Assembly (NCBI GenBank): GCA_977020255.1
Contig: CDROCS010000318.1
Span: 248,001-312,000, forward strand
Direction: 5' to 3'
DNA: 64,000 nt
Source of the DNA: Obrimoposthia wandeli
Taxonomy: Eukaryota
The translations under genes and the position numbers were made by a program. Below, in pieces: positions 1 to 46,434 of the stretch (the first letter of the stretch is position 1; each line of letters starts with the position of its first letter). Below the pieces are notes generated by a model that was given only the letters and a program-made list of their open reading frames with translations, made no database searches and was not told where the DNA came from.

Positions 1-420
1 ATTTTTTTTTAAAAGTGGAAGCAATTTGAAATGTTTGAACAAAATCCTTTGGAGAAAATTCTGAAATGTTTGAAATAAATTCAGATAAGCATAAAGTCAA
101 TGAGAGTTAATAGCATAATTTTAAGCTCTGTTAGATTCATCAGTAACTTTCTTTTACAGGAATAATACGCTCATGTTCAATTATTGTGGCCATTGTTGTG
201 ATTTTTGAAATGTTTGTTTGTTAATTAACCACTCTGACTAATCAAAGGGTTTCGTCAGTAAATGTGTTTAATTGAAGTACAGACATGTCTGGTTGTCTGA
301 TTTGAAATTGGAATCAGTCAATCGTGTTGATATGTGCGTGTTGTTTTAACCAATTGCACATCGTGATTTGTAACTACACGCTCGTGGTGTACCCGTAAGT
401 GCTATATAATAGCAGTAGGT

Positions 421-659
421 GGAAGGATGGAGTCTAGACCAATTTACCCCCCATACTAAAGGGTGTCACTCCATAAGGATGTCACACCATAAAAGGTGTC
501 TTGCCACACCATAAGGGTATATGTTGCCTCACCTCTGGTGAGGCAACATATACCCTTATGGTGTGGCAAGACACCTTTTATGGTGTGACACCCTTATGGT
601 GTGACACCCTTTAGAGGGAGGGGGATGGGGGGGTAAATTGATCTAGACTCCATCCTTCC
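421..659. repeat. Terminal palindrome/hairpin, left (239 nt)
   Basis: 481-533 and 537-589 form a perfect 53-bp stem with a TCT loop. It extends to 456-614 with 2 mismatches. After a G-rich bulge, 421-451 pairs with ~629-659 (1 mismatch). Confidence 0.92.
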
Positions 660-699
660 TTGATATACTACTATGGTCGTCCATAGTTTAAAGGGTCAA

Positions 700-1075
700 T
701 TGGCTTAGTCTCCACCCTTCTTTTTGAGATATACCACTATGAAAGGGTCAATTGGCTTAGTCTCCACCCTTCTTTTAGTGGTCTAGTCTCCACCCATCTT
801 TTTGTGGTCTAGTCTCCACCCATCTTTTTGTGGTCTAGTCTCCACCCTTCTTTTAGTGATCTAGTCTCCACCCTTCTTTTAGTGATCTAGTCTCCACCCA
901 TCTTTTTGTGGTCTAGTCTCCACCCTTATTTTTGGTTAACCACTAATTCAAAGGATCAAGTGGCTTAGTCTCCACCCATCTCTTGTGGTCTAGTCTCCAC
1001 CCTTATTTTTGGTTAACCACTAATTCAAAGGATCAAGTGGCTTAGTCTCCACCCTTCTTTTTTGTGATCTAGTCC
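700..1075 (+). repeat. 26-bp subterminal repeat (core GTCTCCACCC), 11 copies
   Basis: Core at 708, 760, 786, 812, 838, 864, 890, 916, 968, 993 and 1045. Confidence 0.9.
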
Positions 1076-1596
1076 ATAATGAAAATTTATGATAAAGTTC
1101 ACACTTAACAATTAAGAATATATGACGTAATCATACACACACTATTTTATGTGAAAATCAAGGCTAAAGTTCACTCTTATCAGTTAAGGAATGTGGTTTT
1201 TAACACACACACTATTCTATGTGAAAGTTTAGATCAAATTATTTTCCTAGGTTTTCACATTTATAGAATTATGATAAAATTTCTTTAAATAACTTCAATT
1301 ATATATTAAAATAAAAATAAAATAAGAAAGAAGTCAGAGAATAATACAAAATTAAACACATTTATTATGTAATTTCATAATATCATCTTCAAACTTAAGT
1401 GAATAACATTTACAAAGTAAGAAAGTCCATTCTTTATACATTCTTTTCGTTTCAACGACTAAGTTACAACAGTATTAATAGAAAATTAGTAAAAATATTA
1501 ATTTATTTTGAATATTTGAATGTGAGTTTGAATAAATGAGAGGTAGAATGAATGTAAATGAATAAAATTATGCATGCAAGTATGAATGTCATTTAC

Positions 1597-2546
1597 AAGT
1601 AAGAGGGTTTAGCAAGTGAATGTAATTTTAAAAATAAGAGTGTCGATAGTTTGATTGAATGCAAGTGTAATTTAGACTATAAGTAAATTAAAATAGAGTT
1701 TTTGTTGAATAAATTATAGTTAGATTGAATGCAAGTATGACGAGCAAGTGATTGATAGTTTGAATTTTCAATACAAGTAAGTGGGTTTAGCAAGTGAATG
1801 TAATTTTAAAAAATAAGAGTGTCGATAGTTTGATTGAATGCAAGTGTAATTTAGACTATAAGTAAATTAAAATAGAGTTTTTGTTGAATAAATTATAGTT
1901 AGATTGAATGCAAGTATGACGAGCAAGTGATTGATAGTTTGAATTTTCAATACAAGTAAGTGGGTTTAGCAAGTGAATGTAATTTTAAAAATAAGAGTGT
2001 CGATAGTTTGATTGAATGCAAGTGTAATTTAGACTATAAGTAAATTAAAATAGAGTTTTTGTTGAATAAATTATAGTTAGATTGAATGCAAGTATGACGA
2101 GCAAGTGATTGATAGTTTGAATTTTCAATACAAGTAAGTGGGTTTAGCAAGTGAATGTAATTTTAAAAATAAGAGTGTCGATAGTTTGATTGAATGCAAG
2201 TGTAATTTAGACTATAAGTAAATTAAAATAGAGTTTTTGTTGAATAAATTATAGTTAGATTGAATGCAAGTATGACGAGCAAGTGATTGTTAGTTTGAAT
2301 TTTCAATACAAGTAAGTGGGTTTAGCAAGTGAATGTAATTTTAAAAATAAGAGTGTCGATAGTTTGATTGAATGCAAGTGTAATTTAGACTATAAGTAAA
2401 TTAAAATAGAGTTTTTGTTGAATAAATTATAGTTAGATTGAATGCAAGTATGACGAGCAAGTGATTGATAGTTTGAATTTTCAATACAAGTAAGTGGGTT
2501 TAGCAAGTGAATGTAATTTTAAAAATAAGAGTGTCGATAGTTTGAT
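1597..2546 (+). repeat. 178-bp satellite, 5 full units (left arm)
   Basis: Marker TGTCGATAG at 1641, 1820, 1998, 2176, 2354 and 2532. Confidence 0.95.
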
Positions 2547-2842
2547 TTTTTAAATTACTTGATATTTTTTTTGCCATTGTCCGTTTAATATAATATGAAT
2601 ATTCAATTTATTTCTTCAAAAATTCATTTTATATGTTAAATAATATTCTTTATCACATTATTGTGGTTTTTATCAAGTGATTTTAACCTTAAACTATAAA
2701 AATATTTTAATTATAAAGTTAGTTGCTGTACCCCGCCCACTGCATATAACATAAATTTCAAATATAAAGTACTATTAAGTTATTATTTCGAATAGTAAAT
2801 GTTTTTTCGAGTTATTTAATTTTGTTTACTAGACATTCGAAA

Positions 2843-5800
2843 ATTTACTTGTAAACTACAATATTTATTTGTTGTTGTATATATTTAGTTTAAAATGGTG
2901 TAAGTTATTACTTTAATATAATTTACAACCAAAACTTCAAATAGTTTACTTGTAAACTACAATATTTATTTGTTGTTGTATATATTTAGTTTAAAATGTT
3001 GTAAGTTATTACTTTAATATAATTTTCAACAAAAACTTCAAGTAGTTTACTTATTAAACATAAGTTTAATGTTTTGTACAATAAATTGACTTGTAAACAT
3101 AATTTATTTTGATATATTTTCAATTTAAAATGTTGTAAGTTATTACTTTAATATAATTTACAACAAAAACTTCAAGTAGTTTAAAATGTTACACAATAAA
3201 ATGTTTATTTGTAAGTTATTACTTTAATATAATTTTCAACAAAAAATTCAAGTAGTTTACTTATTAAACATAAGTTTAATGTTTTGTACAATAAATTGAC
3301 TTGTAAACATAATTTATTTTGATATATTTTCAATTTAATATGTTGTAAGTTATTACTTTAATATAATTTACAACAAAAACTTCAAGTAGTTTACTTATTA
3401 AACATAAGTTTAATGTTTTGTACAATAAATTGACTTGTAAACATAATTTATTTTGATATATTTTCAATTTAATATGTTGTAAGTTATTACTTTAATATAA
3501 TTTACAACAAAAACTTCAAGTAATTTACTTGTAAACTACAATATTTATTTGTTGTTGTATATATTTAGTTTAAAATGTTGTAAGTTATTACTTTAATATA
3601 ATTTTCAACAAAAACTTCAAGTAGTTTACTTATTAAACATAAGTTTAATGTTTTGTACAATAAATTGACTTGTAAACATAATTTATTTTGATATATTTTC
3701 AATTTAATATGTTGTAAGTTATTACTTTAATATAATTTACAACAAAAACTTCAAGTAGTTTACTTATTAAACATAAGTTTAATGTTTTGTACAATAAATT
3801 GACTTGTAAACATAATTTATTTTGATATATTTTCAATTTAATATGTTGTAAGTTATTACTTTAATATAATTTACAAAAAAAACTTCAAGTAATTTACTTG
3901 TAAACTACAATATTTATTTGTTGTTGTATATATTTAGTTTAAAATGTTGTAAGTTATTACTTTAATATAATTTTCAACAAAAAAACTTCAAGTAGTTTAC
4001 TTATTAAACATAAGTTTAATGTTTTGTACAATAAATTGACTTGTAAACATAATTTATTTTGATATATTTTCAATTTAATATGTTGTAAGTTATTACTTTA
4101 ATATAATTTACAACAAAAACTTCAAGTAGTTTACTTATTAAACATAAGTTTAATGTTTTGTACAATAAATTGACTTGTAAACATAATTTATTTTGATATA
4201 TTTTCAATTTAATATGTTGTAAGTTATTACTTTAATATAATTTACAACAAAAACTTCAAGTAATTTACTTGTAAACTACAATATTTATTTGTTGTTGTAT
4301 ATATTTAGTTTAAAATGTTGTAAGTTATTACTTTAATATAATTTTCAACAAAAACTTCAAGTAATTTACTTGTAAACTACAATATTTATTTGTTGTTGTA
4401 TATATTTAGTTTAAAATGTTGTAAGTTATTACTTTAATATAATTTTCAACAAAAATTTCAAGTAGTTTACTTATTAAACATAAGTTTAATGTTTGTACAA
4501 TAAATTGACTTGTAAACATAATTTATTTTTGATATATTTTCAATTTAATATGTTGTAAGTTATTACTTTAATATAATTTACAACAAAAACTTCAAGTAGT
4601 TTACTTATTAAACATAAGTTTAATGTTTTGTACAATAAATTGACTTGTAAACATAATTTATTTTGATATATTTTTAATTTAATATGTTGTAAGTTATTAC
4701 TTTAATATAATTTACAACAAAAACTTCAAGTAGTTTACTTATTAAACATAAGTTTAATGTTTTGTACAATAAATTGACTTGTAAACATAATTTATTTTGA
4801 TATATTTTCAATTTAATATGTTGTAAGTTATTACTTTAATATAATTTACAACAAAAACTTCAAGTAATTTACTTGTAAACTACAATATTTATTTGTTGTT
4901 GTATATATTTAGTTTAAAATGTTGTTAGTTATTACTTTAATATAATTTTCAACAAAAACTTCGAGTAGTTTACTTATTAAACATAAGTTTAATGTTTTGT
5001 ACAATAAATTGACTTGTTAACATAATATATTTATGCATATATTAACTTTAATATGTTGTAACTTATTACTTTAATATAATTTTCAACAAAAACTTCAAGT
5101 AGTTTACTTATTAATCATAAGTTTAATGTTTTGTACAATAATTTGACTTGTAAACATAATATATTTATGCATATATTAACTTTAATATGTTGTAACTTAT
5201 TACTTTAATATAATTTTCAACAAAAACTTCAAGTAGTTTACTTATTAATCATAAGTTTAATGTTTTGTACAATAAATTGACTTGTAAACATAATTTATTT
5301 TTGATATATTTTCAATTTAATATGTTGTAAGTTATTACTTTAATATAATTTACAACAAAAACTTCAAGTAGTTTACTTATTAAACATAAGTTTAATGTTT
5401 TGTACAATAAATTGACTTGTAAACATAATTTATTTTGATATATTTTCAATTTAATATGTTGTAAGTTATTACTTTAATATAATTTACAACAAAAACTTCA
5501 AGTAGTTTACTTATTAAACATAAGTTTACTTATTAAACATAAGTTTAATGTTTTGTACAATAAATTGACTTGTAAACATAATTTATTTTGATATATTTTC
5601 AATTTAATATGTTGTAAGTTATTACTTTAATATAATTTACAACAAAAACTTCAAGTAATTTACTTGTAAACTACAATATTTATTTGTTGTTGTATATATT
5701 TAGTTTAAAATGTTGTAAGTTATTACTTTAATATAATTTTCAACAAAAACTTCTAGTAATTTACTTGTAAACTACAATATTTATTTGTTGTTGTATATAT

Positions 5801-8157
5801 TTAGTTTAAAATGTTGTAAGTTATTACTTTAATATAATTTTCAACAAAAATTTCAAGTAGTTTACTTATTAAACATAAGTTTAATGTTTTGTACAATAAA
5901 TTGACTTGTAAACATAATTTATTTTTGATATATTTTCAATTTAATATGTTGTAAGTTATTACTTTAATATAATTTACAACAAAAACTTCAAGTAGTTTAC
6001 TTATTAAACATAAGTTTAATGTTTTGTACAATAAATTGACTTGTAAACATAATTTATTTTGATATATTTTCCATTTAATATGTTGTAAGTTATTACTTTA
6101 ATATAATTTACAACAAAAACTTCAAGTAGTTTACTTATTAAACATAAGTTTAATGTTTTGTACAATAAATTGACTTGTAAACATAATTTATTTTGATATA
6201 TTTTCAATTTAATATGTTGTAAGTTATTACTTTAATATAATTTACAACAAAAACTTCAAGTAATTTACTTGTAAACTACAATATTTATTTGTTGTTGTAT
6301 ATATTTAGTTTAAAATGTTGTTAGTTATTACTTTAATATAATTTTCAACAAAAACTTCGAGTAGTTTACTTATTAAACATAAGTTTAATGTTTTGTACAA
6401 TAAATTGACTTGTTAACATAATATATTTATGCATATATTAACTTTAATATGTTGTAACTTATTACTTTAATATAATTTTCAACAAAAACTTCAAGTAGTT
6501 TACTTATTAATCATAAGTTTAATGTTTTGTACAATAATTTGACTTGTAAACATAATATATTTATGCATATATTAACTTTAATATGTTGTAACTTATTACT
6601 TTAATATAATTTTCAACAAAAAACTTCAAGTAGTTTACTTATTAATCATAAGTTTAATGTTTTGTACAATAAATTGACTTGTAAACATAATTTATTTTTG
6701 ATATATTTTCAATTTAATATGTTGTAAGTTATTACTTTAATATAATTTACAACAAAAACTTCAAGTAGTTTACTTATTAAACATAAGTTTAATGTTTTGT
6801 ACAATAAATTGACTTGTAAACATAATTTATTTTGATATATTTTCAATTTAATATGTTGTAAGTTATTACTTTAATATAATTTACAACAAAAACTTCAAGT
6901 AATTTACTTGTAAACTACAATATTTATTTGTTGTTGTATATATTTATATATATTTAGTTTAAAATGTTGTAAGTTATTACTTTAATATAATTTTCAACAA
7001 AAACTTCAAGTAGTTTACTTATTAAACATAAGTTTAATGTTTTGTACAATAAATTGACTTGTAAACATAATTTATTTTGATATATTTTCAATTTAATATG
7101 TTGTAAGTTATTACTTTAATATAATTTACAACAAAAACTTCAAGTAATTTACTTGTAAACTACAATATTTATTTGTTGTTGTATATATTTAGTTTAAAAT
7201 GTTGTAAGTTATTACTTTAATATAATTTTCAACAAAAACTTCAAGTAGTTTACTTATTAATCATAAGTTTAATGATTTGATCAATAAATTGACTTGTAAA
7301 CATAATATAATTTGCATATTTTCAATTTAACACGTTGTAAGTTATTACTATAATATAACATTACAAAAAAAGTAATTAAACATAAGTTTACTGTTTTGTA
7401 AATAAATGACTTGTAAACATAATATATTTATACATATATTCACTTTAAAATGTTGTAAGTTATTACTTTAATATAATTTTCAACAAAAAAAAAAAAACTT
7501 CAAGTAGTTTACTTATTAAACATAAGTTTAATGTTTTGTACAATAAATTGACTTGTAAACATAATTTATTTTGATATATTTTCAATTTAATATGTTGTAA
7601 GTTATTACTTTAATATAATTTACAACAAAAACTTCAAGTAATTTACTTGTAAACTACAATATTTATTTGTTGTTGTATATATTCAGTTTAAAATGTTGTA
7701 AGTTATTACTTTAATATAATTTTCAACAAAAATTTCAAGTAGTTTACTTATTAATCATAATATTAATGATTGATCAATAAATTGACTTGTAAACATAATA
7801 TAATTTGCATATTTTCAATTTAACACGTTGTAAGTTATTACTATAATATTACATTACATAAAAAAGTAATTGATAGTTTACTATCGTTTACAATAAATTG
7901 ACTTGTAAACATAATATATTTATGCATATATTCACTTTAATATGTTGTAAGTTATTACTTTATTATAATTTTCAACAAAAACTTCAAGTAGTTTACTTAT
8001 TAAACATAAGTTTAATGTTTTGTACAATAAATTGACTTGTAAACATAATTTATTTTGATATATTTTCAATTTAATATGTTGTAAGTTATTACTTTAATAT
8101 AATTTACAACAAAAACTTCAAGTAATTTACTTGTAAACTACAATATTTATTTGTTGT

Positions 8158-8201
<44 letters not shown>

Positions 8202-8243
8202 GTTTAAAATGTTGTAAGTTAATACTTTAATATAATTTACAAA
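2843..8243 (+). repeat. AT-rich composite satellite (134-bp A units and 101-bp B units plus variants; about 40-45 units) with higher-order structure
   Basis: Units share the core ATGTTGTAAGTTATTACTTTAATATAATTT(T/A)CAACAAAAACTTCAAGTA. A: 3371 to 3505 = 134 bp; B: 3505 to 3606 = 101 bp. A (TA)n tract at ~8161-8198 lies in the last unit. Confidence 0.93.
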
Positions 8244-8823
8244 TATCGTAACAACCAAGTTAACTTACCAGATAACTGTGTAGTTAAGGTAATTTATCAT
8301 TTAGTCTGAAACAATGAATACCAAATCGCCTACAATGCATGTGTTGGGGTTTCTATACGAAACTTGGTATAGAGCCTCTTGAATGCGCGGAGGGCCCCAA
8401 CGTGAGTTCGATTAGAAGCAGGTCTTAAAGTTGGTCGTGGCCTACTTAGTGTTATGGTTGCCTAATCTCTTGTGCTATCTGAAGGTATTTGATTTGATGT
8501 CTCTTAGTCTGAAGGGTGTAAAAACAACTTGTTCTAATGTAGGAAATTGTTTATTCGTAATTCACGTAACTAACACAACAATACGTTTATGTACGTATTT
8601 CTAAAAAGTATGATAAAATTCCTAAAGGACTTCTGTAAGTCTCTACAAGAAGTGGGGATGAACCACGTATCGATTTTACGTTCAGGTGATTAAGTTTTTT
8701 AGGTTTAGTCTTCTTACTCAGGTTGGTTAATCTATAACGCAACTCTCTTAAATTTCTTCGCTCCTACTTCTTATCTCTAGATAATGTTTCTTGGTTCCTT
8801 AACTCTATCTGTGTGTGTTTGAC

Positions 8824-9258
8824 CCGAATTGTCTACTGTAAACAATGGGTCTCCTAAAAACCTAATTGTCAAGATGACAATGAAAACTTACTCCTAATTG
8901 TCAACTACGGACAATGAACGAACCGAATTGTCAGCTAGGGACAATGAGTCTTACCGAATTGTCTACTAGGGACAATGAGTATTTATCCGAATTGTCAACT
9001 AGGGACAATGAATGAACCTAATTGTCAGCTAGGGACAATGAATCTTACGGTAAAAAGTCTGGGTATGATTCCTAATTGTCGCTGGGGACAATGAATAAAT
9101 GTCAGATCTTAATTACCAACTAGGGGCAATGATTTTGTTAAAGAGTCGGATTGTCCTAATTGCCAGCTAGGGGCAATGAATTTGTGTATTAGTTTAAAAT
9201 GTAGAATTACCAACAAGGGGTAATGACAGTATCCTAATTGCCAACTAGGGGCAATGAA
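8824..9258. repeat. Array of 12 spaced palindromic motifs CC(G/T)AATTGTC-N7-GACAATGA with variable spacers
   Basis: Left arms start at 8828, 8865, 8897, 8927, 8958, 8991, 9021, 9075, 9112, 9159, 9206 and 9237. The loop is mostly 7 nt (A(A/G)CTAGG). Confidence 0.9.
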
Positions 9259-9471
9259 TAGTCTAGTTGGTGTTCTTACCAGTTACGGCAACTAGTGGGA
9301 CGTCCGATGCAGATCCGTAGGTTTTCCGGAATCCTCTTCGAAACAGAGATTGTCCCTTGCGTGAGGCTTGAGTACACGCTTGACCTGACCTTTGGATACT
9401 GGACAATTATTTTTTATTCAGATACTGAACAACTATTCTTTATTTACCTCGAATGCACTTCGGCTTGGTTT

Positions 9472-9774
9472 TTCTGGACACGTGGCCTTTTGGATAACAA
9501 TTATTGGACACTTGGCTTTTGGATAACGATTATTGGACACTTGGCTTTTTGGATAACGATTATTGGACACTTGGCTTTTCGGTTAACGATTATTGGACAC
9601 TGGGCTTTTCGGTTAACGATTATTGGACACTTGGCTTTTTGGTTAACGATTATTGGACACTTGGCTTTTTGGTTAACGATTATTGGACACTTGGCTTTTT
9701 GGTTAACGATTATTGGACACTTGGCTTTTTGGTTAACGATTATTGGACACTTGGCTTTTTGGTTAACGATTATT
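9472..9774 (+). repeat. 30-bp tandem repeat (TATTGGACACTTGGCTTTTTGGTTAACGAT), about 10 copies
   Basis: TATTGGACAC at 9502, 9531, 9561, 9591, 9621, 9651, 9681, 9711 and 9741, plus a degenerate copy near 9472. Confidence 0.95.
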
Positions 9775-9837
9775 CAATTTATCTAAAAACAAATTAATAC
9801 GGTCCAAAACCACCAAAAATTTACCGTTGTTCTCCGC

Positions 9838-10006
9838 CTAGTTGATTGCTCGTCCAGTTGATTGCTCGTAGTATTTTTATTTGTGACTTGTTGCTCTTTG
9901 GTTCTCCTTATATAAAGGCACTGTACGTCAATCAATTGACGGCTGCTTGACGATTTGGTTCGGCGATATCGGAGAGGCAAAATGGAATGTCAATCAATTG
10001 ACAGCT
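9838..10006. promoter_or_regulatory. Putative promoter or control region of the element
   Basis: Contains AGTTGATTGCTCG twice, a TATA-like TATATAAAG near 9909, and the palindrome GTCAATCAATTGAC twice (~9927, ~9990). Function is inferred only. Confidence 0.3.
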
Positions 10007-10957
10007 GGAATTGAAATTAGTCTATTGCACGAAAAAGTGCTTACCTTCTTGAATCCTTGATTGACGTGTTTAATTAACCGTTTTTTCTTAATTACTTCTA
10101 AATTGTCCCTTTTGGGTTAATTAATTTAACTTTTATACATTTTCGCATAATACACGACCTTCGTGGTCCTCCTAATTTTTACCCTAAATTCCACTAATTT
10201 TAATTCTAAAACTAAAATTAATATTTTAATCTAATTTTCAACCTTGCTTTCAAGGATTTTTATTTTAGTATTTAATCGACTAAAATATTTAATTTTCTTA
10301 ATTCTCAACCTTAACACATGTATAATTTAATTGTCAACTACAGTAAACTATAATTACTCTTTGTGTACAGTAATAATTTCCAATATATTAAAGTAAACAT
10401 TTACAAAATATAATCTGTTTACAAGTCAATTTATCATACAAATCCTTAAATTATGATTAATAAGTAAACTACTTGAAGTTTATTGTTGTAAATATATTAT
10501 GTTTACAAGTCAATTTATCGTACAAATCATTAATATTATGATTATTAAGTAAACTATTTGAAGTTTTGGTTGTAAATTATATTAAAGTAATAACTTACAA
10601 CATTTTAAACTAAATATATACAACAACAAATAAATATTGTAGTTTACAAGTAAATTTTCGAATGTCTAGTAAACAAAATTAAATAACTCGAAAAAACATT
10701 TACTATTCGAAATAATAAACTTAATAGTACTTTATATTTGAAATTTATGTTATATGCAGTGGGCGGGGTACAGCAACTAACTTTATAATTAAAATATTTT
10801 TATAGTTTAAGGTTAAAATCACTTGATAAAAACCACAATAATGTGATAAAGAATATTATTTAACATATAAAATGAATTTTTGAAGAAATAAATTGAATAT
10901 TCATATTATATTAAACGGGCAATGGCAAAAAAAAAATCAAGTAATTTAAAAAAAAAT

Positions 10958-13150
10958 CAAACTATCGACACTCTTATTTTTTAAAATTACATTCACTTGC
11001 TAAACCCACTTACTTGTATTGAAAATTCAAACTAACAATCACTTGCTCGTCATACTTGCATTCAATCTAACTATAATTTATTCAACAAAAACTCTATTTT
11101 AATTTACTTATAGTCTAAATTACACTTGCATTCAATCAAACTATCGACACTCTTATTTTTAAAATTACATTCACTTGCTAAACCCACTTACTTGTATTGA
11201 AATTCAAACTATCAATCACTTGCTCGTCATACTTGCATTCAATCTAACTATAATTTATTCAACAAAAACTCTATTTTAATTTACTTATAGTCTAAATTAC
11301 ACTTGCATTCAATCAAACTATCGACACTCTTATTTTTAAAATTACATTCACTTGCTAAACCCACTTACTTGTATTGAAAATTCAAACTATCTATCACTTG
11401 CTCGTCATACTTGCATTCAATCTAACTATAATTTATTCAACAAAAACTCTATTTTAATTTACTTATAGTCTAAATTACACTTGCATTCAATCAAACTATC
11501 GACACTCTTATTTTTAAAATTACATTCACTTGCTAAACCCACTTACTTGTATTGAAAATTCAAACTATCAATCACTTGCTCGTCATACTTGCATTCAATC
11601 TAACTATAATTTATTCAACAAAAACTCTATTTTAATTTACTTATAGTCTAAATTACACTTGCATTCAATCAAACTATCGACACTCTTATTTTTAAAATTA
11701 CATTCACTTGCTAAACCCACTTACTTGTATTGAAAATTCAAACTATCAATCACTTGCTCGTCATACTTGCATTCAATCTAACTATAATTTATTCAACAAA
11801 ACTCTATTTTAATTTACTTATAGTCTAAATTACACTTGCATTCAATCAAACTATCGACACTCTTATTTTTAAAATTACATTCACTTGCTAAACCCACTTA
11901 CTTGTATTGAAAATTCAAACTATCAATCACTTGCTCGTCATACTTGCATTCAATCTAACTATAATTTATTCAACAAAAACTCTATTTTAATTTACTTATA
12001 GTCTAAATTACACTTGCATTCAATCAAACTATCGACACTCTTATTTTTAAAATTACATTCACTTGCTAAACCCACTTACTTGTATTGAAAATTCAAACTA
12101 TCAATCACTTGCTCGTCATACTTGCATTCAATCTAACTATAATTTATTCAACAAAACTCTATTTTAATTTACTTATAGTCTAAATTACACTTGCATTCAA
12201 TCAAACTATCGACACTCTTATTTTTAAAATTACATTCACTTGCTAAACCCACTTACTTGTATTGAAAATTCAAACTATCAATCACTTGCTCGTCATACTT
12301 GCATTCAATCTAACTATAATTTATTCAACAAAAACTCTATTTTAATTTACTTATAGTCTAAATTACACTTGCATTCAATCAAACTATCGACACTCTTATT
12401 TTTAAAATTACATTCACTTGCTAAACCCACTTACTTGTATTGAAAATTCAAACTATCAATCACTTGCTCGTCATACTTGCATTCAATCTAACTATAATTT
12501 ATTCAACAAAACCTCTATTTTAATTTACTTATAGTCTAAATTACACTTGCATTCAATCAAACTATCGACACTCTTATTTTTAAAATTACATTCACTTGCT
12601 AAACCCACTTACTTGTATTGAAAATTCAAACTATCAATCACTTGCTCGTCATACTTGCATTCAATCTAACTATAATTTATTCAACAAAACTCTATTTTAA
12701 TTTACTTATAGTCTAAATTACACTTGCATTCAATCAAACTATCGACACTCTTATTTTTAAAATTACATTCACTTGCTAAACCCACTTACTTGTATTGAAA
12801 ATTCAAACTATCAATCACTTGCTCGTCATACTTGCATTCAATCTAACTATAATTTATTCAACAAAAACTCTATTTTAATTTACTTATAGTCTAAATTACA
12901 CTTGCATTCAATCAAACTATCGACACTCTTATTTTTTAAAATTACATTCACTTGCTAAACCCACTTACTTGTATTGAAAATTCAAACTATCAATCACTTG
13001 CTCGTCATACTTGCATTCAATCTAACTATAATTTATTCAACAAAAACTCTATTTTAATTTACTTATAGTCTAAATTACACTTGCATTCAATCAAACTATC
13101 GACACTCTTATTTTTAAAATTACATTCACTTGCTAAACCCTCTTACTTGT
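10958..13150 (-). repeat. 178-bp satellite, 12 full units (right arm)
   Basis: Marker CGACACT occurs 13 times from 10966 to 13100, spaced 177-179 bp. Confidence 0.95.
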
Positions 13151-13669
13151 AAATGACATTCATACTTGCATGCATAATTTTATTCATTTACATTCATTCT
13201 ACCTCTCATTTATTCAAACTCACATTCAAATATTCAAAATAAATTAATATTTTTACTAATTTTCTATTAATACCGTTGTAACATAGTCGTTGAAACGAAA
13301 AGAATGTATAAAGAATGGACTTTCTTACTTTGTAAATGTTATTCACTTAAGTTTGAAGATGATATTATGAAATTACATAATAAATGTGTTTAATTTTGTA
13401 TTATTCTCTGACTTCTTTCTTATTTTATTTTTATTTTAATATATAATTGAAGTTATTTAAAGAAATTTTATCATAATTCTATAAATGTGAAAACCTAGGA
13501 AAATAATTAGATCTAAACTTTCACATAGAATAGTGTGTGTGTTAAAAACCACATTCCTTAACTGATAAGAGTGAACTTTAGCCTTGATTTTCACATAAAA
13601 TAGTGTGTGTATGATTACGTCATATATTCTTAATTGTTAAGTGTGAACTTTATCATAAATTTTCATTAT

Positions 13670-14020
13670 GGACTAGATCACAAAAAAGAAGGGTGGAGAC
13701 TAAGCCACTTGATCCTTTGAATTAGTGGTTAACCAAAAATAAGGGTGGAGACTAGACCACAAGAGATGGGTGGAGACTAAGCCACTTGATCCTTTGAATT
13801 AGTGGTTAACCAAAAATAAGGGTGGAGACTAGACCACAAAAAGATGGGTGGAGACTAGATCACTAAAAGAAGGGTGGAGACTAGATCACTAAAAGAAGGG
13901 TGGAGACTAGACCACAAAAAGATGGGTGGAGACTAGACCACAAAAAGAAGGGTGGAGACTAAGCCAATTGACCCTTTCATAGTGGTATATCTCAAAAAGA
14001 AGGGTGGAGACTAAGCCAAT
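13670..14020 (-). repeat. 26-bp subterminal repeat (GGGTGGAGAC), 10 copies
   Basis: Core at 13691, 13743, 13768, 13820, 13846, 13872, 13898, 13924, 13950 and 14002. Confidence 0.9.
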
Positions 14021-14059
14021 TGACCCTTTAAACTATGGACGACCATAGTAGTATATCAA

Positions 14060-14299
14060 GGAAGGATGGAGTCTAGATCAATTTACCCCCCCCCATCCCC
14101 CTCCCTCTAAAGGGTGTCACACCATAAGGGTGTCACACCATAAAAGGTGTCTTGCCACACCATAAGGGTATATGTTGCCTCACCAGAGGTGAGGCAACAT
14201 ATACCCTTATGGTGTGGCAAGACACCTTTTATGGTGTGACATCCTTATGGAGTGACACCCTTTAGGGGGGGGGTAAATTGGTCTAGACTCCATCCTTCC
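14060..14299. repeat. Terminal palindrome/hairpin, right (240 nt)
   Basis: Mirror copy of 421-659, centred on CCTCACC-AGA-GGTGAGG. Confidence 0.92.
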
Positions 14300-15038
14300 A
14301 CCTACTAATAGCCCGACGATTGTTGTAATTGTTTTTCTGTATGTGCATGTAAAAAGGAAAATATGATGAAAATTCTGACTGCGATGGTGAGTGTGAGGAT
14401 TGTAATAAACAAAGAGCTGAGGTGATAAATCTGAAATTTTGGATAAGTAGAGAAACAATGAAAAGGTCAGTTTAAGTGGTGATGAAATTAGTGTAATGCA
14501 CGTTTATTTTGAAAACAAAGTTGATGATCAAGTTATCTTTATTTCATGGTTATTGTGTTATAATGCTACTCATGTTCCCGAAAAACTTTATCTTTATGTG
14601 TGAATAATTTGTGCATCACGTCGACCACGAAGTTAACAGTGTTCAATTGTATGTATTTGGTATTGACAACTTAAAATGATTCTAATTATGACGATCTTTG
14701 AAAGGTTATTCTTAATTTTTATCATTAATTAAACATACTATGTGAATTTATTGGATAGTGGTACTTAGAAATTAAAACATAATTTGGCAGATAAAATATA
14801 GTTACCTCTATAGCAGAAGTGTCCAGACGTTTTCAGGCGCGAGTAAAATCAATGATTCTCTTAATCTTTAAGTCAAAAACTTCTTCAAAAAATCGAAAAT
14901 GATTATTTTTGGATCTTTTCAGTTTTTATAATAAACAAATAAAATTCATAAATTTTCTAATATTATCAGATTTCAGTTAAAATTTGTCCAAAAATACATC
15001 CACTGTTATATTTTACCTTACTTTACCTTACTCCAAAG

Positions 15039-15423: not shown

Positions 15424-15949
15424 TTATAACTGATCATCTCAGAGTTAGTTCGCTCAATCCACAACGATGCAAGGGTTAATATCAAATTCTTCTTCACAAA
15501 AGCATACGGTGCTATATTCGTTGACTATCAATAAATATATAATACAAATTTATGGTAGGGAAGTCGGGACTCTTCAAGCCAAGTTTATTTCCTTAGCGAC
15601 TTTTCTTTGCGGTATCCATTCCGACGACATCGCCATCTATCATGTCGATCTATTAAGTTCAAAGTCATGTCTTCAGAGAAATTCAAATATGTAGGAGGAA
15701 TACTTACTCTCTGTAAGAGCGAACGATACTTTTATTGTCGTTGCATTCTTGTATTAACTTCAGCAACTTCATCGTCAACGAAACAAAATTTCAAAAATGT
15801 AACTAAATAAAACAAACGTTTTAGCAAATAACATTTAAAACAACAATTAAACTGATTTCATTAAATGGCTTAAAACTAGTTATATGATAAAAATACTATT
15901 GACCTGCATGTTTCTGATATTTTAAAATGAAAAGAGAAATATTGCTAAC

Positions 15950-16069
15950 CATATCATAATCCTTGAAATATGGTGCGATGTTGATTCGTCGCTGCTTCAC
16001 CTGTTCTTTCATAGCATTAAGGATAACAGATATTTTCTTCTCCTCGTTTAATGACAGATTCTGTAGAGC
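15950..16069 (-). CDS. EF-hand-like repeat protein, exon 7 (3' end of gene unresolved)
   Basis: Follows a 43-nt intron; encodes ALQNLSLNEEKKISVILNAMKEQVKQRRINIAPYFKDYDM; GTTAGC donor. Exons 1-7 total 390 codons. Confidence 0.75.
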
Positions 16070-16112
16070 CTGTTGAGAAATTAGTCTCGATGCAGTTCTC
16101 CAATAGAATTAC

Positions 16113-16186
16113 CCTTGATAAAGACCCACTCGGAGGATAGGGAGCTTCTTTCAGAGGATCTTTCTCCATATTCAGCACATGGAAAG
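16113..16186 (-). CDS. EF-hand-like repeat protein, exon 6
   Basis: TTTTCTAG acceptor; encodes (P)FHVLNMEKDPLKEAPYPPSGSLSR; phase-consistent. Confidence 0.75.
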
Positions 16187-17576
16187 CTAGAAAACAATTA
16201 ATTCCAATAAAATTTGTTTTAGAGTTTAAGGGATTTTGACATTCAGATTCAAGTGAACGTCTTAAAACTTTGTTTGGAATTCACTGTACGTTCATTTCTA
16301 TAATCATCAACGTATAAGCCTCCTACTTACATTTAAAATTATTAACGGTGAACTATAGGTGAAACATAGGATAATGTAAGCTTAAATTGTCATGGGGATA
16401 TTGAAAAAGATATTATATACGAATTCCTAGTGGACCATGTTTGATACGCAGAACTGACGACCTAGAGAACGGGAATATCTGAGTGAGCAGTAATAAATAT
16501 CGTATCTATCCAAATCGATATTCACATCATGTTTATTAGATGATAATTCTACAAACTTAGTAACAATATAGATAAGGGAAGACGGAAAATTACATTTGTA
16601 CTTATGAAATAAAAGAAGAAAAGATTCGGATGATATAAATTTTCTTAATAGAATTCAAAATTTTCAATTCAATTTTAATAAATTCAATAATAAATTCTTT
16701 CATATTTTTATCAAAAATTTTATAAAGAATCTCATTTAATTTTGTAGAAATTACGTTTGTAAAATATGTTAAGCGATAAAGATTGTTAACTTATTTCAAT
16801 TTTATAAGAAAAATATTAATATGTTATTTGTTTAATTTGTTTGAACCTTCTAAAATTACACATAAAGTTTAATATGAATTCCATTAAAGATTATTTTAGA
16901 AAATACTTTTTTTATTGACTATATTTATTCATTTATTTAAATGATAAAGTTAATCTAGTTTTTTGTTTCTAAGTTATATACATTTAATTAATTATAACTA
17001 TTTCAAAAGAATCAGTATTAGCTATATTTTATAATTTTTTTTGTATAGTACATTTAAAATTTATCTGTAATATATTATTGAATAAATATATTGAAATTAA
17101 TCATATGCATTATTATTTAAATTAGTAATAATTAAAAAGACTGTTTTGTAATATATTTACAATAATTTCTAAAGTTATTTGCAATATTATTTTAATATAA
17201 CAAATTATAGAAAATAATATTTAAAACTGTACATTTATAACTTTTAACTTAATACAGATAGGTCGTTAAAAACTATACAGAATTATTTTAATTAATCATT
17301 TTGTTGCTTGATTTTTTAATAATTTTTGTCCAATTTGATTTGTGACCGAAAATGTATGAAATTTGTTGATACATATAACAACGGTTAGAATATACTAATA
17401 AAAACATGTCGCAAATAGTTCACGAGTGTATTGTGTCGACAAACTTTGACTCGTGTATGAAATGGGTTAAATAAGCGACACTGTCCATTGGTTCGCAGAT
17501 CAATCTGACATTATTGCACCAGGTTGAAAGTTATCGACGGTAAACGGGGCAACTACAATGAGATTTTTCCACTTAC

Positions 17577-17773
17577 GATTATCCATGTTACGGCAGAAAT
17601 CGCGATAAGAAACAAATCCATCCGGTCGTCGATAATAATTGGCCAGTTTCTGAATCTCGCCTCGGGCCAATCCGGACTCCCGGCCAATGGCCATGCTCAG
17701 GGCACACACAAATTGGTTCTCAGTGACTGAGTCATGTCTGAGTTTGTCATGATCCACAAAGAAATCCATGATC
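17577..17773 (-). CDS. EF-hand-like repeat protein, exon 5
   Basis: Encodes (R)IMDFFVDHDKLRHDSVTENQFVCAL...DGFVSYRDFCRNMDN; GTAAGT donor, phase 1. Repeats the D-x-D-K-L-R-x-x-x-V-T-x-x-Q-F motif of exons 1-2. Confidence 0.85.
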
Positions 17774-18822
17774 CTGCGTGAGCATTGTTAAATTATAAAT
17801 TGGTTTTAAGGCTTCGATTTGATGTAAATTGAATATTTTCGAAACCAATAATATGTCTTATTTTAGATAAGCTTTTTAAATGTGTTAAAATATTAAATCT
17901 CTTAAATGATAATGAAAAACGTTTGGTACTGGAAGGATTAGAATTCCTTTCAAATTTACAGTAATTAAAAAGTTGTTGAATAAAACAAAGAAAAAGTGTA
18001 TTGGATCAACGTACACTAGCAAGGGAAAATTTTGAAAGTGTAATACTGTTAAATTGACGAGATTAAAATCCTTGATATATATAAGAGAAAAAGTAATAAA
18101 AAAGTTATGAATTTAGTTTTAAGTCAAACATTTCAAATTATTTGTTTATCTAAACGAAAGTTATTTAAAATTTTGTTTAAACATAAAATAAACTATTTTG
18201 AAAGTTATAATATTTTTTAATAATATAAACTTTAGTTTCAGTTATTTGAAAAATAGTATAACTTATTTATTAGAATAACCTATATACACAGTTACAGAAA
18301 ATAATTATTTCGAAACAAGTTTCGTTTCAATTTTTGTTAATTTCAGAGCATTAAAATAAAATTTGATTGTTTATTTCCAAATTTCTTCATTTTTCATGGT
18401 ATTTAGCAGATGAATGATAAAAATGATATCTTATAAATATTTACTTTTATTTAAAATTGATAAACTTAATATTCAGAAATGCCCAGTTGCGATTATTTCC
18501 TTGTTAAAAAATGCAAAACGGGCTTCAAAGTCAAAATCTATAATATTGAAATTAAAAACATTGTAAAAATTTAGATTTGAATTTAAGTTACAAATAAATT
18601 AAACTGTAAGGATATGTAATTATAAATTGAAGAGTATAACTAAAATAAGAAAATGCTTTTCAAATCGAAAAATAATAATAACAGAGGCCTAAATTTCATC
18701 CATATTAGACTTTTAAATTAAGCTTCAATGCAGTAGAATTGAAAACTATGTAAACTTGAGGTAAAGACGTAGACTATATAGGGAACAAGCAACTGCTTCG
18801 TCCAAACCTGCAACCATGAGTA

Positions 18823-20612
18823 CACCTATTGTAACTTAGTAAGTTATACTAAGTCAATTAGTAAGTTAGAATCACTTAAACGTGATTAGATCATTTAATT
18901 ACCAATGTAATTGCAAATGATTTAAGTGGTTTTAACTTATTTGTAGTTTAACTTATTTAACAGTTTAATGTTATTTTATACACTTTAACTGTTTTTAAAC
19001 TTTAAATTTTACAGTTAAACGTGATTTTATTATATAATTTATATTTATTATAATTATATAATGATTTAACTGTTTTTTGGATATAAAGTTTAAAAAGGAA
19101 TGAAGAAAAAATAAATAGAAATGTTATATTTATAATACATAGTTATAAAATGGATTCTTTCTTCATGTATCGCGGAAAGAATTTTTTTATGTGACTGTAA
19201 TGAGAAGTTACATCTTGGTTTGAGGAATCAATCAGTACGCCAGCGATACTTTCGCGGATTTTAAATATTTTTTCCTCCGATGAAGCTTGCAGCATACCAG
19301 CAGTCCGCGTAAGTTTCTTCCTCACATCACTTTTCACTTTAGAAAAAACCGTTTCAATAGGGTTTAAAAGGGACTGTAAGGGGGTAAATTTACAATTTTG
19401 TGGAGTGATGAGGTGGTGAGTGTCCGATTGTGGATACTGGCGTTGTCATGGATAAGATAATGTTGGGTATCTGGTAATCGTAGAGACAGATCTGCTACGA
19501 AAGCTTGATAAAGTAAATGGGTAAACGATCCTGCTACAACTTCAGAATGTACAGGACCCTGTTTTGAAATTGCCATGACGAGGCTTAGTGATCGGGATCG
19601 AGCTGGGACGGTATGGTATATACGAAGTCCCCGTCGAGATCGACCCATTCTTTGTCTTGTCCAGACATTTATAGACGTTTCATCTATATAGATGCATTCT
19701 TTGGACTTCCAACCTTCTTCCATCAATTTTGTTACGTATTCGCAACGCAAATCTTTTACGGCATCTGAGTTTTGCCAACTACAGAGTACCTTATTTTCTT
19801 CCGGGTGACAAGTTGACCTTTTAAAAAATTAGCGATTGTTTTCATGCTGGGACTAATATTGTGATTTTCTGCCACGAACATATTAATCTCATTTAAAGTA
19901 GCTGTGTTGTTGGCGTCCAGAAAACATAAAATTGCTTCACCGATAGTTTCGGTTATTAATTTGTGCCGATAACCTCCAACATGTCCAGTTGACAGAACTT
20001 CATTCTTATTGTACCTTTTAGAATAATAATTTTAAAAATTCAAATGAAATACCTGGACACTAAATTGTATATGGACCCCGAACACTGGTAGCCCAACATC
20101 TTAGCTAATGATACATAATCATGTCCTTCATGATAACATTTTATGATTCTTTCCTTATCTATACGAGAAATTCTATAAAAAATAAAGATATGTTAAATGT
20201 TAAAAAACAAACTTTTGTCGAGATTTAAGTGGTGTAGGCTGACTAGGTCCATCCAAATCATTAAATCGGAAAGGAAATGTACGCTCAGACTCTACACTCG
20301 ATATATTTGAAAGGTTTTCATACATTTTTAATATACCTAATCTAACTTAGTAAGTTCTTTTTAACTTAGTAAGTTGCTATCAAATTGTGCCTCTCGGTGG
20401 GTTTTGATTGGATTGTTATTATTTTCAAATCCACGTATGTATGTGGTATTTTATTTTTACCTGTATTTTAATCTAATAACCTATTTTTAATTTAGTAACT
20501 TGGCCAGAAACTCAGTTGTACCCAATTCAGGCTATGTGATTCTATTCAAATATCAAATGCAGGTATTAATTTAGTAACTTATCTAATTTAATTTACTAAT
20601 TTACAATAGGCG
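18823..20612 (-). mobile_element. IS630/Tc1-superfamily DNA transposon (~1.8 kb) in intron 4 of the EF-hand gene
   Basis: Imperfect TIRs CCTATTGTAA(C/A)TTAGTAA at 18825 and 20610; TA on the left flank only; subterminal TTAGTAAGTT repeats; internal DDE transposase. Confidence 0.8.
19143..20000 (-). pseudogene. Frameshifted Tc1/IS630-like DDE transposase
   Basis: Motifs IYIDET, LIHDNASIH and LPPYSPF-(L)NPIE. There is a 1-nt loss in a T-run near 19366 and another frameshift near 19780. Confidence 0.85.
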
Positions 20613-20786
20613 TCGTAGATTTGACAATCAATGTTGGAATTGAGAAAGTGAAAACAAACAGAACAGAAAAGGATACTTTTGTAAAATAAATTATCATTAG
20701 TTACTCTCTACTTGTAGTTTGGAGTGAGTACACGGATAACGCATCTGACTACAGGTCGAAAGAAGCCCACAATACCAAAGCCCAAC

Positions 20787-21070
20787 CTGATACCGCGCTT
20801 GTGGACAGTGAAGCGGATTCTGTCCTCGATCATCTGCACCGATGGACTGTCACACCGTTCTTGGGGCAGCATTCTGGCCGCTCGAGCTGTATCCTCGGTG
20901 GTGTTGAGCACCGCCATCTGTTGTAGCCTGATGTCTTCTATGGCCACAAGGTCGTTGTGCAGATTCAGGTAGTTGATCATTGTTGGATTCTCAGGGTGTC
21001 TGTATTTGCGAACTAGCAGAGTTAGTTCTGTGTCAGTGATGTCCTTGGGACCCGGAAATCCGCGGTAGAA
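20787..21070 (-). CDS. EF-hand-like repeat protein, exon 4
   Basis: TTTCTGCAG acceptor; encodes FYRGFPGPKDITDTELTLLVRKY...INYLNLHND...IEDRIRFTVHKRGI(R); GTTGGG donor, phase 2. Confidence 0.82.
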
Positions 21071-21369
21071 CTGCAGAAATAGGAATTTCCAGTGCGGAGT
21101 TTGAAGATACGGGAGAAAATTGAATTTTTAGTCATTTAATCAATCGCGTGAAAGAATTTATCGATGGAAAATATTTGTGTATTTCATAAATTGTAATTGA
21201 AATAAAGGTAAACTAGGTATACAATATTGTATGCAACTACATGTACTATATGTACTAAGAGAATAAATACTTTTATTGTTTAGTTAAGCATTTACATTTA
21301 TCTTCATAAGATAATTATAATAGAAAGAGATAGAAGGATATATAAAGGAGATAAATCCAAAAAACGAAC

Positions 21370-21535
21370 CTGTGTTTCAGTGATGAGCCCGATGTTATGG
21401 ACGTCAAAGTCCCGATAGGAATTGCGGATTGTGAATCCCTGGTATTCGTAGAATTGATTGAGTCGCTGTAGTATTGGCAACAGTCGAGCCTCAGATTCAG
21501 GTGAGAGTGGTCGTACAGAACGTACTTGACCAAGG
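21370..21535 (-). CDS. EF-hand-like repeat protein, exon 3
   Basis: CAG acceptor; encodes (Y)LGQVRSVRPLSPE...RNSYRDFDVHNIGLITETQ; GTTCGT donor, phase 0. Confidence 0.85.
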
Positions 21536-22490: not shown

Positions 22491-22535
22491 CTTTTTTAAA
22501 ATAATTTTTAAACATTTGATAGAAAAAATATGTAC

Positions 22536-46366: not shown

Positions 46367-46434
46367 AGAAGCCAGTAAAGAACAGTCCCCTGGCTTCGAT
46401 CGAGAACATCTCCAATGGAAATATTTCTAAGCCA
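46367..46434 (+). CDS. MICAL-like protein, exon 4
   Basis: Encodes (K)KPVKNSPLASIENISNGNISKP; TTTCAG/GTAAGT boundaries; phase-consistent. Confidence 0.7.

What the first reader, a model, noticed from the sequence alone, without database searches (positions are those of the whole stretch)
8824..9258. Array of 12 spaced palindromes with compensatory base changes (origin/enhancer-like)
Seen: ~25-bp units CC(G/T)A-ATTGTC-N7-GACAAT-GA separated by non-repetitive spacers of ~5-30 nt. Along the array the two arms change together: ATTGTC/GACAAT (8865-9092), ATTGCC/GGCAAT (9159, 9237) and ATTACC/GGTAAT (9206), with one half-changed intermediate, ATTACC/GGCAAT (9112). Covariation points to selection on symmetry or pairing rather than on sequence. 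Inference: these are cruciform/hairpin elements or dimeric protein-binding sites, analogous to baculovirus hr palindromes. Alternatively they are RNA stem-loops cut from a repeat-spacer transcript.
Basis: partly seen in the sequence, partly recalled or inferred. Interest (0 to 1): 0.85.

Follow-up and report, generated by a model that had tools for sequence, protein, structure and literature searches.

The report
Hairpin-unit repeat array inside foldback transposon
A real 435-base array of twelve short stem-loop-shaped repeats, whose two arms stay complementary when they change, sits in the non-coding centre of a 13.9-kb foldback-type transposon of an AT-rich animal-like genome; it is a curious but unproven structural or protein-binding array, not a viral origin.

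Summary
Twelve same-orientation units lie at 8827-9257. Each has 6-nt arms around a 5-7-nt loop. The motif occurs 11 times against 0.02 expected and nowhere else in the window. Two stem positions change on both sides (T-A to C-G in four units; G-C to A-T in one). The two single-sided changes are A.C/C.A on the + strand, hence G.T wobbles on the - strand, where all 72 stem cells pair. Given 5-7 random arm substitutions, two or more compensated pairs arise with p of about 0.0006-0.02. This rests on about two independent events in one locus.

The array lies in the ORF-free 2.1-kb middle domain of a foldback-like transposon (415-14305). That element has kilobase inverted arms full of tandem repeats and a 7/8 target-site duplication. 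The window has no viral genes, no Rfam match and no relatives in any searchable collection.

Best reading (about 0.4): structure-constrained stem-loop units read on a single strand by a protein. Rivals are double-stranded dimer-binding sites upstream of a TATA-like promoter (about 0.3), and a neutral minisatellite whose dyads are kept symmetric by template-switch mutation (about 0.22). Homology to baculovirus hr and a CRISPR-like reading are rejected. Interest is moderate to low.

The parts
8821..9259 (.). Array of 12 dyad (stem-loop-shaped) units. Unit starts are 8827, 8864, 8896, 8926, 8957, 8990, 9020, 9074, 9111, 9158, 9205 and 9236. Each unit has 6-nt arms, a 5-7-nt loop, an invariant A before the 5' arm and an invariant G after the 3' arm.
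8821..8851 (-). Unit 1 with an extra outer stem (GACCC/GGGTC). It is the strongest hairpin of the array: -13.0 kcal/mol, z -3.9 on the - strand.
8892..9048 (.). Higher-order block duplication inside the array. Units 3-4 match units 6-7 at 92% over 63 nt; TRF period 94.
   Evidence: (D8)
9107..9259 (.). Units 9-12. This clade carries the C-G replacement of the T-A stem pair. Units 9 and 11 also carry the G-to-A change, which is compensated only in unit 11.
415..14305 (.). Host element: a 13.9-kb foldback-like DNA transposon.
407..414 (.). Left copy of the putative 8-bp target-site duplication (TAATAGCA).
14306..14313 (.). Right copy of the putative target-site duplication (TAATAGCC; 7 of 8 identical).
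415..3150 (.). Left inverted arm. It holds a terminal ~240-bp self-palindromic module (to ~660), 26/77-bp tandem repeats (758-1074) and 178-bp tandem repeats (1594-2547).
3150..8242 (.). AT-rich satellite (periods 134/235/369 bp) that lengthens the left arm. Only ~290 bp of it is present on the right (10366-10657).
8243..10365 (.). Middle domain: unique in the window and without a credible ORF. It holds the array.
9475..9774 (.). Neighbouring 30-bp tandem repeat: 10 copies, 96% matches.
9909..9916 (+). TATA-like box about 650 bp to the right of the array. It lies between two copies of a 14-mer direct repeat (9840-9869) and two copies of a perfect 14-bp palindrome (9927-9940, 9989-10002).
   Evidence: read from the sequence; promoter function is inferred only
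10366..14305 (.). Right inverted arm. It has 12.4 copies of the 178-bp repeat at 10955-13151, 26/77-bp repeats at 13671-13961 and the terminal palindromic module at ~14058-14305.

Best explanation
The array is a tandemly grown, now degenerate set of twelve short stem-loop units (6-bp stem, 5-7-nt loop, bracketed by an invariant A and G). It is carried in the non-coding middle domain of a foldback-type DNA transposon. The constraint acts on complementarity of the arms rather than on their letters. The units therefore most likely act when one strand is single, either as a transcript or as single-stranded DNA. The - strand is the better candidate, because every stem position pairs there. Each hairpin is too weak to stand alone, so a protein that binds the stem-loop, repeated along the array, is inferred. 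Shown here: the units, the covariation, the wobble-only exceptions, the tolerated loop lengths and the transposon context. Inferred only: that the strand is ever single, which strand it is, the binding protein and any benefit to the element or host.
For: There are two stem pairs with changes on both sides and no transversion mismatch: 97.2% of cells pair on the + strand and 100% on the - strand. The slid-partner controls drop to 11-66% paired. Stem pair 10/20 is the top mutual-information pair of 378. Given 5-7 random arm substitutions on a plausible genealogy, P(>=2 compensated pairs) is 0.0006-0.018. Under unconstrained change at the loop's rate, keeping >=97% pairing has P <= 3e-4. The arms change less than the loop (Fisher p = 0.0075). 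The two most diverged units have 4/7 and 5/7 loop positions changed but only 1/12 and 0/12 arm positions changed. Loop lengths of 5, 6 and 7 nt occur with perfect arms. That is easy for a hairpin and awkward for a fixed-spacing dimer site. All units share one orientation and have asymmetric invariant flanks. Single units fold as the predicted hairpin on both strands. The half-changed unit folds only on the - strand.
Against: The covariation comes down to about two independent events, because the four C-G units form one clade, and it comes from one locus only. No other copy could be found. The hairpins are marginal: -3.6 to -4.8 kcal/mol as RNA, with z-scores of -0.5 to -1.7. In the whole-array fold the arms pair between units rather than locally. 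There is no Rfam family and no evidence of transcription. Template switching can symmetrise DNA dyads without selection (PMC8794818). Most known arrays in mobile elements are double-stranded binding sites.
Confidence: 0.4

Rival explanations
1. The units are double-stranded DNA sites for a dimeric sequence-specific protein, either a host factor or a transposase or regulator supplied in trans. The array then works as a multimerised enhancer-, insulator- or transposase-recruiting module. One possibility is that it acts on the TATA-like promoter about 650 bp to its right.
For: The units have dyad symmetry, and the outer half-site letters are invariant: ATT/AAT in 12 of 12 units, plus invariant flanks A and G. 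Twelve sites lie in 435 bp. This resembles known mobile-element arrays: the gypsy insulator with 12 sites in 340 bp (PMC2374998), baculovirus hr (PMC4535591, PMC2834656) and the secondary transposase sites in Galileo repeats (PMC3688188). The downstream layout is a 30-bp repeat array, a duplicated 14-mer, a TATA-like box and two 14-bp palindromes. The arms are too short for a stable structure.
Against: Half-sites read independently should not change together, yet both-sided complementary changes exceed chance. Half-site spacing varies over 5, 6 and 7 bp with perfect arms. A centre-to-centre distance of 13 bp puts the half-sites on different helix faces. Unit spacing shows no helical phasing: 30-54 bp. 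The promoter is only a sequence resemblance.
Confidence: 0.3
2. The array has no function. It is one more internal minisatellite of a repeat-generating foldback element, seeded by a unit that happened to contain a short inverted repeat. Its arms are kept symmetric by replication template switching (quasi-palindrome correction) and by recent block duplication.
For: The element is packed with tandem arrays of 26, 77, 178, 134-369 and 30 bp. Foldback elements are known seeds of satellite DNA, and their middle domains are variable and non-coding (PMC4079207). Units 3-7 are recent block duplicates. Template switching can fix stem pairing in one step (PMC8794818). An unrelated metagenomic contig (L039) is also made of ~28-bp units with co-varying arms, so such arrays are not unique.
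Against: The arms are about 2.5-fold less changed than the loop, and they are intact in the two units whose loops are mostly replaced. Neutral change at the loop's rate almost never keeps >=97% pairing. The units are far more diverged (66-92%) than the element's arms (98-100%). The array is therefore older than this insertion and has been retained.
Confidence: 0.22
3. The array is a homologue of baculovirus hr (a viral origin/enhancer) or part of an integrated large DNA virus.
For: The only support is the general likeness of repeated palindromes separated by other sequence (PMC4535591).
Against: No viral gene occurs in 64 kb. There is one array rather than dispersed copies. The unit, the terminal module and the 30-bp repeat are all absent from viral contigs. 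The dyad is 6+7+6 nt, not a 24-30-bp near-continuous palindrome within a ~64-bp repeat.
Confidence: 0.02
4. The array is a repeat-spacer locus whose transcript is cut at the stem-loops into guide-like small RNAs.
For: The repeats are palindromic and the sequence between them is non-repetitive.
Against: The spacers are 5-29 nt and irregular. They match nothing else in the window. The context is eukaryotic, with no adjacent protein genes. No CRISPR-repeat model hits the array.
Confidence: 0.02

Closest known systems
Foldback-type transposons with internally repetitive arms (Drosophila FB, Tetris, Galileo; PMC4079207, PMC3688188)
   Same: The host element has kilobase inverted arms made of a flanking module plus tandem repeats, a non-coding middle domain, a 7-8-bp target-site duplication and a satellite expanding from the arm. 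In Galileo, repeats inside the arms carry extra transposase-binding sites.
   Different: The palindrome array lies in the middle domain, not in the arms. Its units are dyads with compensatory changes, which the papers read here do not report for those elements. No sequence similarity to them was or could be tested. No autonomous partner was seen. The hAT element in the window has different ends.
Baculovirus homologous regions (hr) (PMC4535591, PMC2834656)
   Same: Both are several copies of a palindrome-containing repeat in one block. hr act as dimer-protein-bound enhancers and origins, which is the working model of the double-stranded rival.
   Different: hr lie in virus genomes in several dispersed copies. 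Their units are ~64-bp repeats with a 24-bp imperfect palindrome, bound by IE-1. Here there is a single array in a cellular transposon, with 6-nt arms around a non-palindromic 7-nt core and no viral genes.
gypsy insulator (12 Su(Hw) sites in 340 bp of a retrotransposon 5' UTR; PMC2374998)
   Same: It has the same number of sites and the same scale, short variable spacers, and is carried by a mobile element in a non-coding stretch.
   Different: The gypsy sites are non-palindromic 12-bp cores in AT-rich flanks within an LTR retroelement. Here the sites are dyads in a DNA transposon, and no binding protein is known.
Stem pairing created or maintained by replication template switching (PMC8794818, PMC5453318)
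   Same: It explains one-step complementary changes in short inverted repeats such as those at stem columns 9/21 and 10/20.
   Different: It is a mutation mechanism, not a function. It does not by itself explain why the arms change less often than the loops.

Membership tests
Baculovirus hr | Lies in a baculovirus (large DNA virus) genome, as several dispersed copies | tested here: not met
   The window holds host-like multi-exon genes and DNA transposons and no viral domain. The motif occurs in one place only. It is absent from viral contigs.
Baculovirus hr | Unit is a ~60-70-bp direct repeat containing a 24-30-bp imperfect palindrome (PMC4535591) | tested here: not met
   The units have 6-nt arms around a 5-7-nt non-palindromic core, at a period of 30-54 bp.
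Baculovirus hr | Bound by IE-1; enhancer and origin activity | not testable with these tools
   No binding or activity data are available, and no IE-1-like gene lies in the window.
Foldback-type DNA transposon (the host element) | Long terminal inverted repeats that contain tandem repeats | tested here: met
   Arms 415-3150 and 10366-14305 are 94-100% complementary and carry 26-, 77- and 178-bp arrays.
Foldback-type DNA transposon (the host element) | Non-coding middle domain between the arms | tested here: met
   The middle domain is 8243-10365. The only ORF over 100 aa (9295-9786) is a read-through of the 30-bp repeat and has no homologue.
Foldback-type DNA transposon (the host element) | Target-site duplication at the outer ends | tested here: met
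   TAATAGCA (407-414) matches TAATAGCC (14306-14313) at 7 of 8 positions. The chance of >=7/8 in a fixed register is about 4e-4.
Foldback-type DNA transposon (the host element) | Multiple copies in the genome; mobilised by a related autonomous element | not testable with these tools
   No eukaryotic genome collection is searchable by DNA. There is one copy in the window.
Transposase secondary binding sites (Galileo type) | Sites lie within the tandem repeats of the inverted arms and are bound by the element's transposase | tested here: not met
   The array is in the middle domain, and the motif is absent from both arms. Binding is not testable.
CRISPR-like repeat-spacer array | Regular repeats with unique spacers of similar length (tens of nt), neighbouring effector genes, prokaryotic or viral host | tested here: not met
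   The spacers are 5-29 nt and irregular. There are no adjacent genes. No CRISPR-DR model hits the array.
Any curated structured-RNA family (Rfam 15) | Covariance-model match | tested here: not met
   There were no matches at gathering thresholds over the window and none in the array at E <= 10.
gypsy-type Su(Hw) insulator | Non-palindromic 12-bp core sites in the 5' UTR of an LTR retrotransposon | tested here: not met
   No LTR-retroelement features surround the array. The units are dyads.

The most novel reading that the evidence does not exclude
A eukaryotic DNA transposon carries, in the loop between its giant inverted arms, a multimerised platform of protein-recognised RNA (or single-stranded DNA) stem-loops kept by compensatory evolution. 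Such a platform could recruit a hairpin-binding factor to the loop of the long hairpin transcript or snap-back strand that such an element forms. It would be a structural-RNA module of a kind not described for foldback elements.
Probability: 0.12. Interest if true: 0.7.

Novelty: new member of a known kind. Interest (0 to 1): 0.35.

Why it matters
If the arms are truly under selection for pairing, this would be a rare case of a DNA transposon carrying a repeated nucleic-acid structure rather than a protein-binding sequence. It could show what the enigmatic middle domains of foldback elements do. If instead template switching keeps the dyads symmetric, the array is a compact natural example of covariation without selection. 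That would be a caution for covariation-based RNA discovery in repeats. Either way the present evidence is one locus with about two informative events, so the practical value today is as a lead for a family-wide comparison.

Tried and rejected
Relatives were sought and not found:
- Exact look-up of the ORF next to the array and of the hAT ORF found nothing.
- A homologue search with the repeat-derived ORF found nothing.
- The unit pattern is absent from viral, metagenome and prokaryote-genome contigs.
- The terminal module and the 30-bp repeat are absent from viral contigs.
- A looser two-unit pattern gave 43 metagenome loci. On inspection these are single chance matches or unrelated repeats.

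Other checks that led nowhere:
- Rfam, tRNA and tmRNA scans were empty.
- The left part of the middle domain folds no better than shuffles, z -0.05 and -1.25.
- The middle domain has no inverted ends of its own, so a nested insertion is not supported.
- The spacers and the middle domain have no second copy in the window.
- The bacterial promoter/terminator scan is irrelevant to a eukaryote.
- A pseudoknot between the 5' flank and the loop was considered and dropped. The flank varies (T/G) without loop compensation, and the connecting loops would have zero length.

Source organism: it could not be named. The MICAL-like exon's best named relatives are Schistosoma proteins at 26% identity. The hAT transposase's best relative is 65% identical and is spread over many phyla. 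The Logan look-ups gave run numbers only.

- My scripts used the column-majority letters of the 12 aligned units as the reference for counting changes and as the start of the neutral simulations.
- One search printed those letters column by column. They were used for counts only and are not reproduced here.
- While reasoning I also recalled a few short textbook binding motifs from memory.

Full report
**1. The observation**

Reading 8500-9600 and listing the units confirms twelve same-orientation units. They start at 8827, 8864, 8896, 8926, 8957, 8990, 9020, 9074, 9111, 9158, 9205 and 9236. A typical one, 8990-9011, reads AATTGTCAACTAGGGACAATGA. The arms are 6 nt.

- The loop is 7 nt in ten units, 5 nt in unit 2 and 6 nt in unit 8.
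- Unit 1 has one arm mismatch but an additional outer stem (8821-8825 with 8847-8851).
- A degenerate unit pattern hits 11 times, all here, against 0.02 expected.
- Half-site patterns are likewise confined to the array.
- G/C-containing 6-bp hairpins are about ten-fold denser here than in the rest of the window.
- TRF and the repeat finder show higher-order periods of 64 and 94 bp. Units 3-4 match units 6-7 at 92%, so some units are recent duplicates.

**2. Covariation**

I aligned the twelve units (A1 for the + strand, A2 for the - strand).

| Measure | + strand | - strand |
|---|---|---|
| Stem cells paired | 97.2% | 100% (72 of 72) |
| Pair at A1 columns 10/20 | T-A in 8 units, C-G in 4 | complementary counts |
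| Pair at A1 columns 9/21 | G-C in 10, A-T in 1, A.C in 1 | the A.C becomes G.T |
| Unit 1 exception | C.A | G.T |

- Sliding the 3' partner by 1-3 columns drops pairing to 11-66% and removes all double changes.
- Of all 378 column pairs, the stem pair 10/20 has the highest mutual information.
- The arms are less changed than the loop: 12/144 against 18/84 cells, Fisher p = 0.0075.
- The two most diverged units have 4/7 and 5/7 loop positions changed but only 1/12 and 0/12 arm positions changed.

Two simulations on a plausible unit genealogy give the following.

- If 30-50 substitutions fall anywhere, two compensated pairs together with >=97% pairing arise with P of 1.5e-5 to 3e-4.
- Conditional on only 5-7 arm substitutions, two or more compensated pairs arise with P of 0.0006 to 0.018.

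Independent arm change is therefore rejected, but on thin data. The four C-G units (9-12) form one clade, so that change is one event. The second compensation sits in the most diverged unit. The genealogy is assumed, not inferred from outside data.

**3. Strength of the structures**

- Single units fold as the expected hairpin at -3.6 to -4.8 kcal/mol as RNA and -0.7 to -4.7 kcal/mol as DNA. Their z-scores are unremarkable.
- The half-changed unit 9 folds only on the - strand.
- Unit 1 on the - strand is the exception, at -13 kcal/mol (z -3.9).
- In whole-array folds the arms pair between units.
- Cruciform extrusion from duplex DNA is therefore implausible, and a free-standing RNA structure is marginal. 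A hairpin reading needs a binding protein.

**4. Context**

The window is AT-rich (about 28% G+C) and ORF-poor. It contains:

- an EF-hand multi-exon gene on the - strand and a MICAL-like gene on the + strand;
- Tc1- and pogo-like fragments;
- a hAT element with an intact 657-aa ORF.

There is no viral gene.

The array lies in the centre of a 13.9-kb inverted-repeat element, 415-14305.

- Its arms (415-3150 and 10366-14305) are 94-100% complementary.
- Each arm starts with a ~240-bp self-palindromic module, followed by 26/77-bp and 178-bp tandem repeats.
- An AT-rich satellite has expanded the left arm by 5 kb.
- The outer flanks, TAATAGCA and TAATAGCC, match at 7 of 8 positions. This indicates insertion as one unit.
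- The 2.1-kb middle domain (8243-10365) is unique in the window. It lacks own inverted ends and credible ORFs.

This is the anatomy described for foldback elements such as Tetris: arms with a flanking domain and tandem repeats, a variable non-coding middle domain, and 8-9-bp duplications (PMC4079207). In Galileo, repeats inside the arms carry secondary transposase-binding sites (PMC3688188).

To the right of the array lie a young 30-bp repeat (10 copies, 96%), a duplicated 14-mer, a TATA-like box at 9909-9916 and two perfect 14-bp palindromes.

**5. Relatives**

None could be obtained.

- No DNA search of eukaryotic genomes is on hand.
- Protein-based look-ups through the repeat-derived ORF failed.
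- The unit is absent from viral, metagenome and prokaryotic contigs.
- A loose two-unit pattern returned 43 metagenome loci at about the chance level.

Two of those loci are worth a note but are not relatives. L016 is a PIF/Harbinger-like element whose subterminal regions are packed with the abutting form of the same hexamers. L039 is a 1-kb contig made wholly of ~28-bp hairpin-shaped units with co-varying arms.

**6. Explanations**

(a) Structure-constrained stem-loops read on one strand by a protein (confidence 0.4).
- For: covariation, wobble-only exceptions on one strand, tolerated loop lengths, one orientation and asymmetric invariant flanks.
- Against: weak stems, a single locus and no sign of transcription.

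(b) Double-stranded dimer sites forming an enhancer-, insulator- or transposase-recruiting array (0.3).
- For: precedent in the gypsy insulator (12 sites in 340 bp, PMC2374998) and baculovirus hr (PMC4535591, PMC2834656), invariant outer half-site letters and the promoter-like layout downstream.
- Against: co-changing half-sites, variable spacing and a 13-bp centre-to-centre distance.

(c) A neutral minisatellite kept symmetric by template switching (0.22).
- For: the mutation mechanism is documented (PMC8794818), and the element is a repeat factory.
- Against: it does not explain why the arms change less than the loops, or why an array much older than this insertion is retained.

(d) hr homology and (e) a CRISPR-like locus are rejected (0.02 each). 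See the membership tests.

**7. Comparison and novelty**

The array works like known multimerised recognition arrays of mobile elements, but it is a member of none that could be tested. The host element passes the structural tests for a foldback-type transposon. I file the finding as a new member of a known kind, namely an internal repeat array of a foldback-type element. It has one unusual property, dyad units with compensatory change, that deserves a family-wide check.

**8. Slips**

My scripts used the column-majority letters of the aligned units as the reference for counts and as the starting state of the simulations. One search printed them column by column. I do not reproduce them. Some short textbook motifs came to mind from memory while reasoning. 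None was used.

**9. Verdict**

- Observation: confirmed.
- Interpretation: partly supported. The covariation is real, but there is no viral kinship, cruciforms are unlikely and a mutational explanation remains open.
- Interest: 0.35.

Noticed in passing
window 415-14305: A 13.9-kb foldback-like transposon with a 7/8 target-site duplication. Over 1281 nt its arms are 100% identical. It carries different copy numbers of a 178-bp repeat (5.4 against 12.4) and a 5-kb AT-rich satellite on one arm only. This is a likely example of satellite growth from a transposon arm.
   Followed up: partly
window 415-662 and 14058-14305: Each end of the foldback element is itself a ~240-bp near-perfect palindrome (MITE-like module). 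The module's own ends are repeated four times in the window.
   Followed up: partly
window 9475-9774: A 30-bp tandem repeat with 10 copies at 96% matches, much younger than the palindrome array beside it. It creates the only ORF over 100 aa in the region (9295-9786), which has no homologue.
   Followed up: partly
window 9840-10002: A promoter-like cluster: a 14-mer direct repeat twice (9840-9853, 9856-9869), a TATA-like box (9909-9916) and a perfect 14-bp palindrome twice (9927-9940, 9989-10002).
   Followed up: no
window 28593-31475: A hAT element with an intact 657-aa ORF (29390-31363; hAT dimerisation domain) and 16-bp inverted ends unlike those of the foldback element. Its best relatives are KIAA1586/ZBED5-like proteins, at most 65% identical and scattered over reptiles, frogs, arthropods, Hydra and tunicates.
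   Followed up: partly
L039 1-1038 (soil metagenome contig Ga0137367_10357748): The whole 1-kb, 22% G+C contig is an array of ~28-bp units, each a 7-bp stem with a 5-nt loop between A-rich spacers. The arms differ between units by paired transitions. It is a second, unrelated example of a co-varying hairpin-unit array, of unknown origin.
   Followed up: partly
L016 1-250 and 2820-3070 (metagenome contig Ga0307517_10061498): A eukaryotic DNA transposon, PIF/Harbinger-like by layout (not checked by domain search). Both subterminal regions are packed with the abutting palindrome GACAATTGTC. These are the same hexamers as the array's arms but in the opposite arrangement.
   Followed up: no
window 15899-22674 (-) and 44265-52559 (+): Host genes. 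One is a multi-exon EF-hand-repeat gene. The other is a MICAL-like gene (CH-domain exon, large low-complexity exon) whose best named relatives are Schistosoma MICAL-like 1 at 26% identity. The source lineage is poorly represented in the protein collections.
   Followed up: partly
window 19146-20031 (-) and 40532-41000 (+): Fragmentary Tc1-like (DDE_3) and pogo-like (HTH_Tnp_Tc5, DDE_1) transposase remnants. Each is split over several reading-frame pieces.
   Followed up: no
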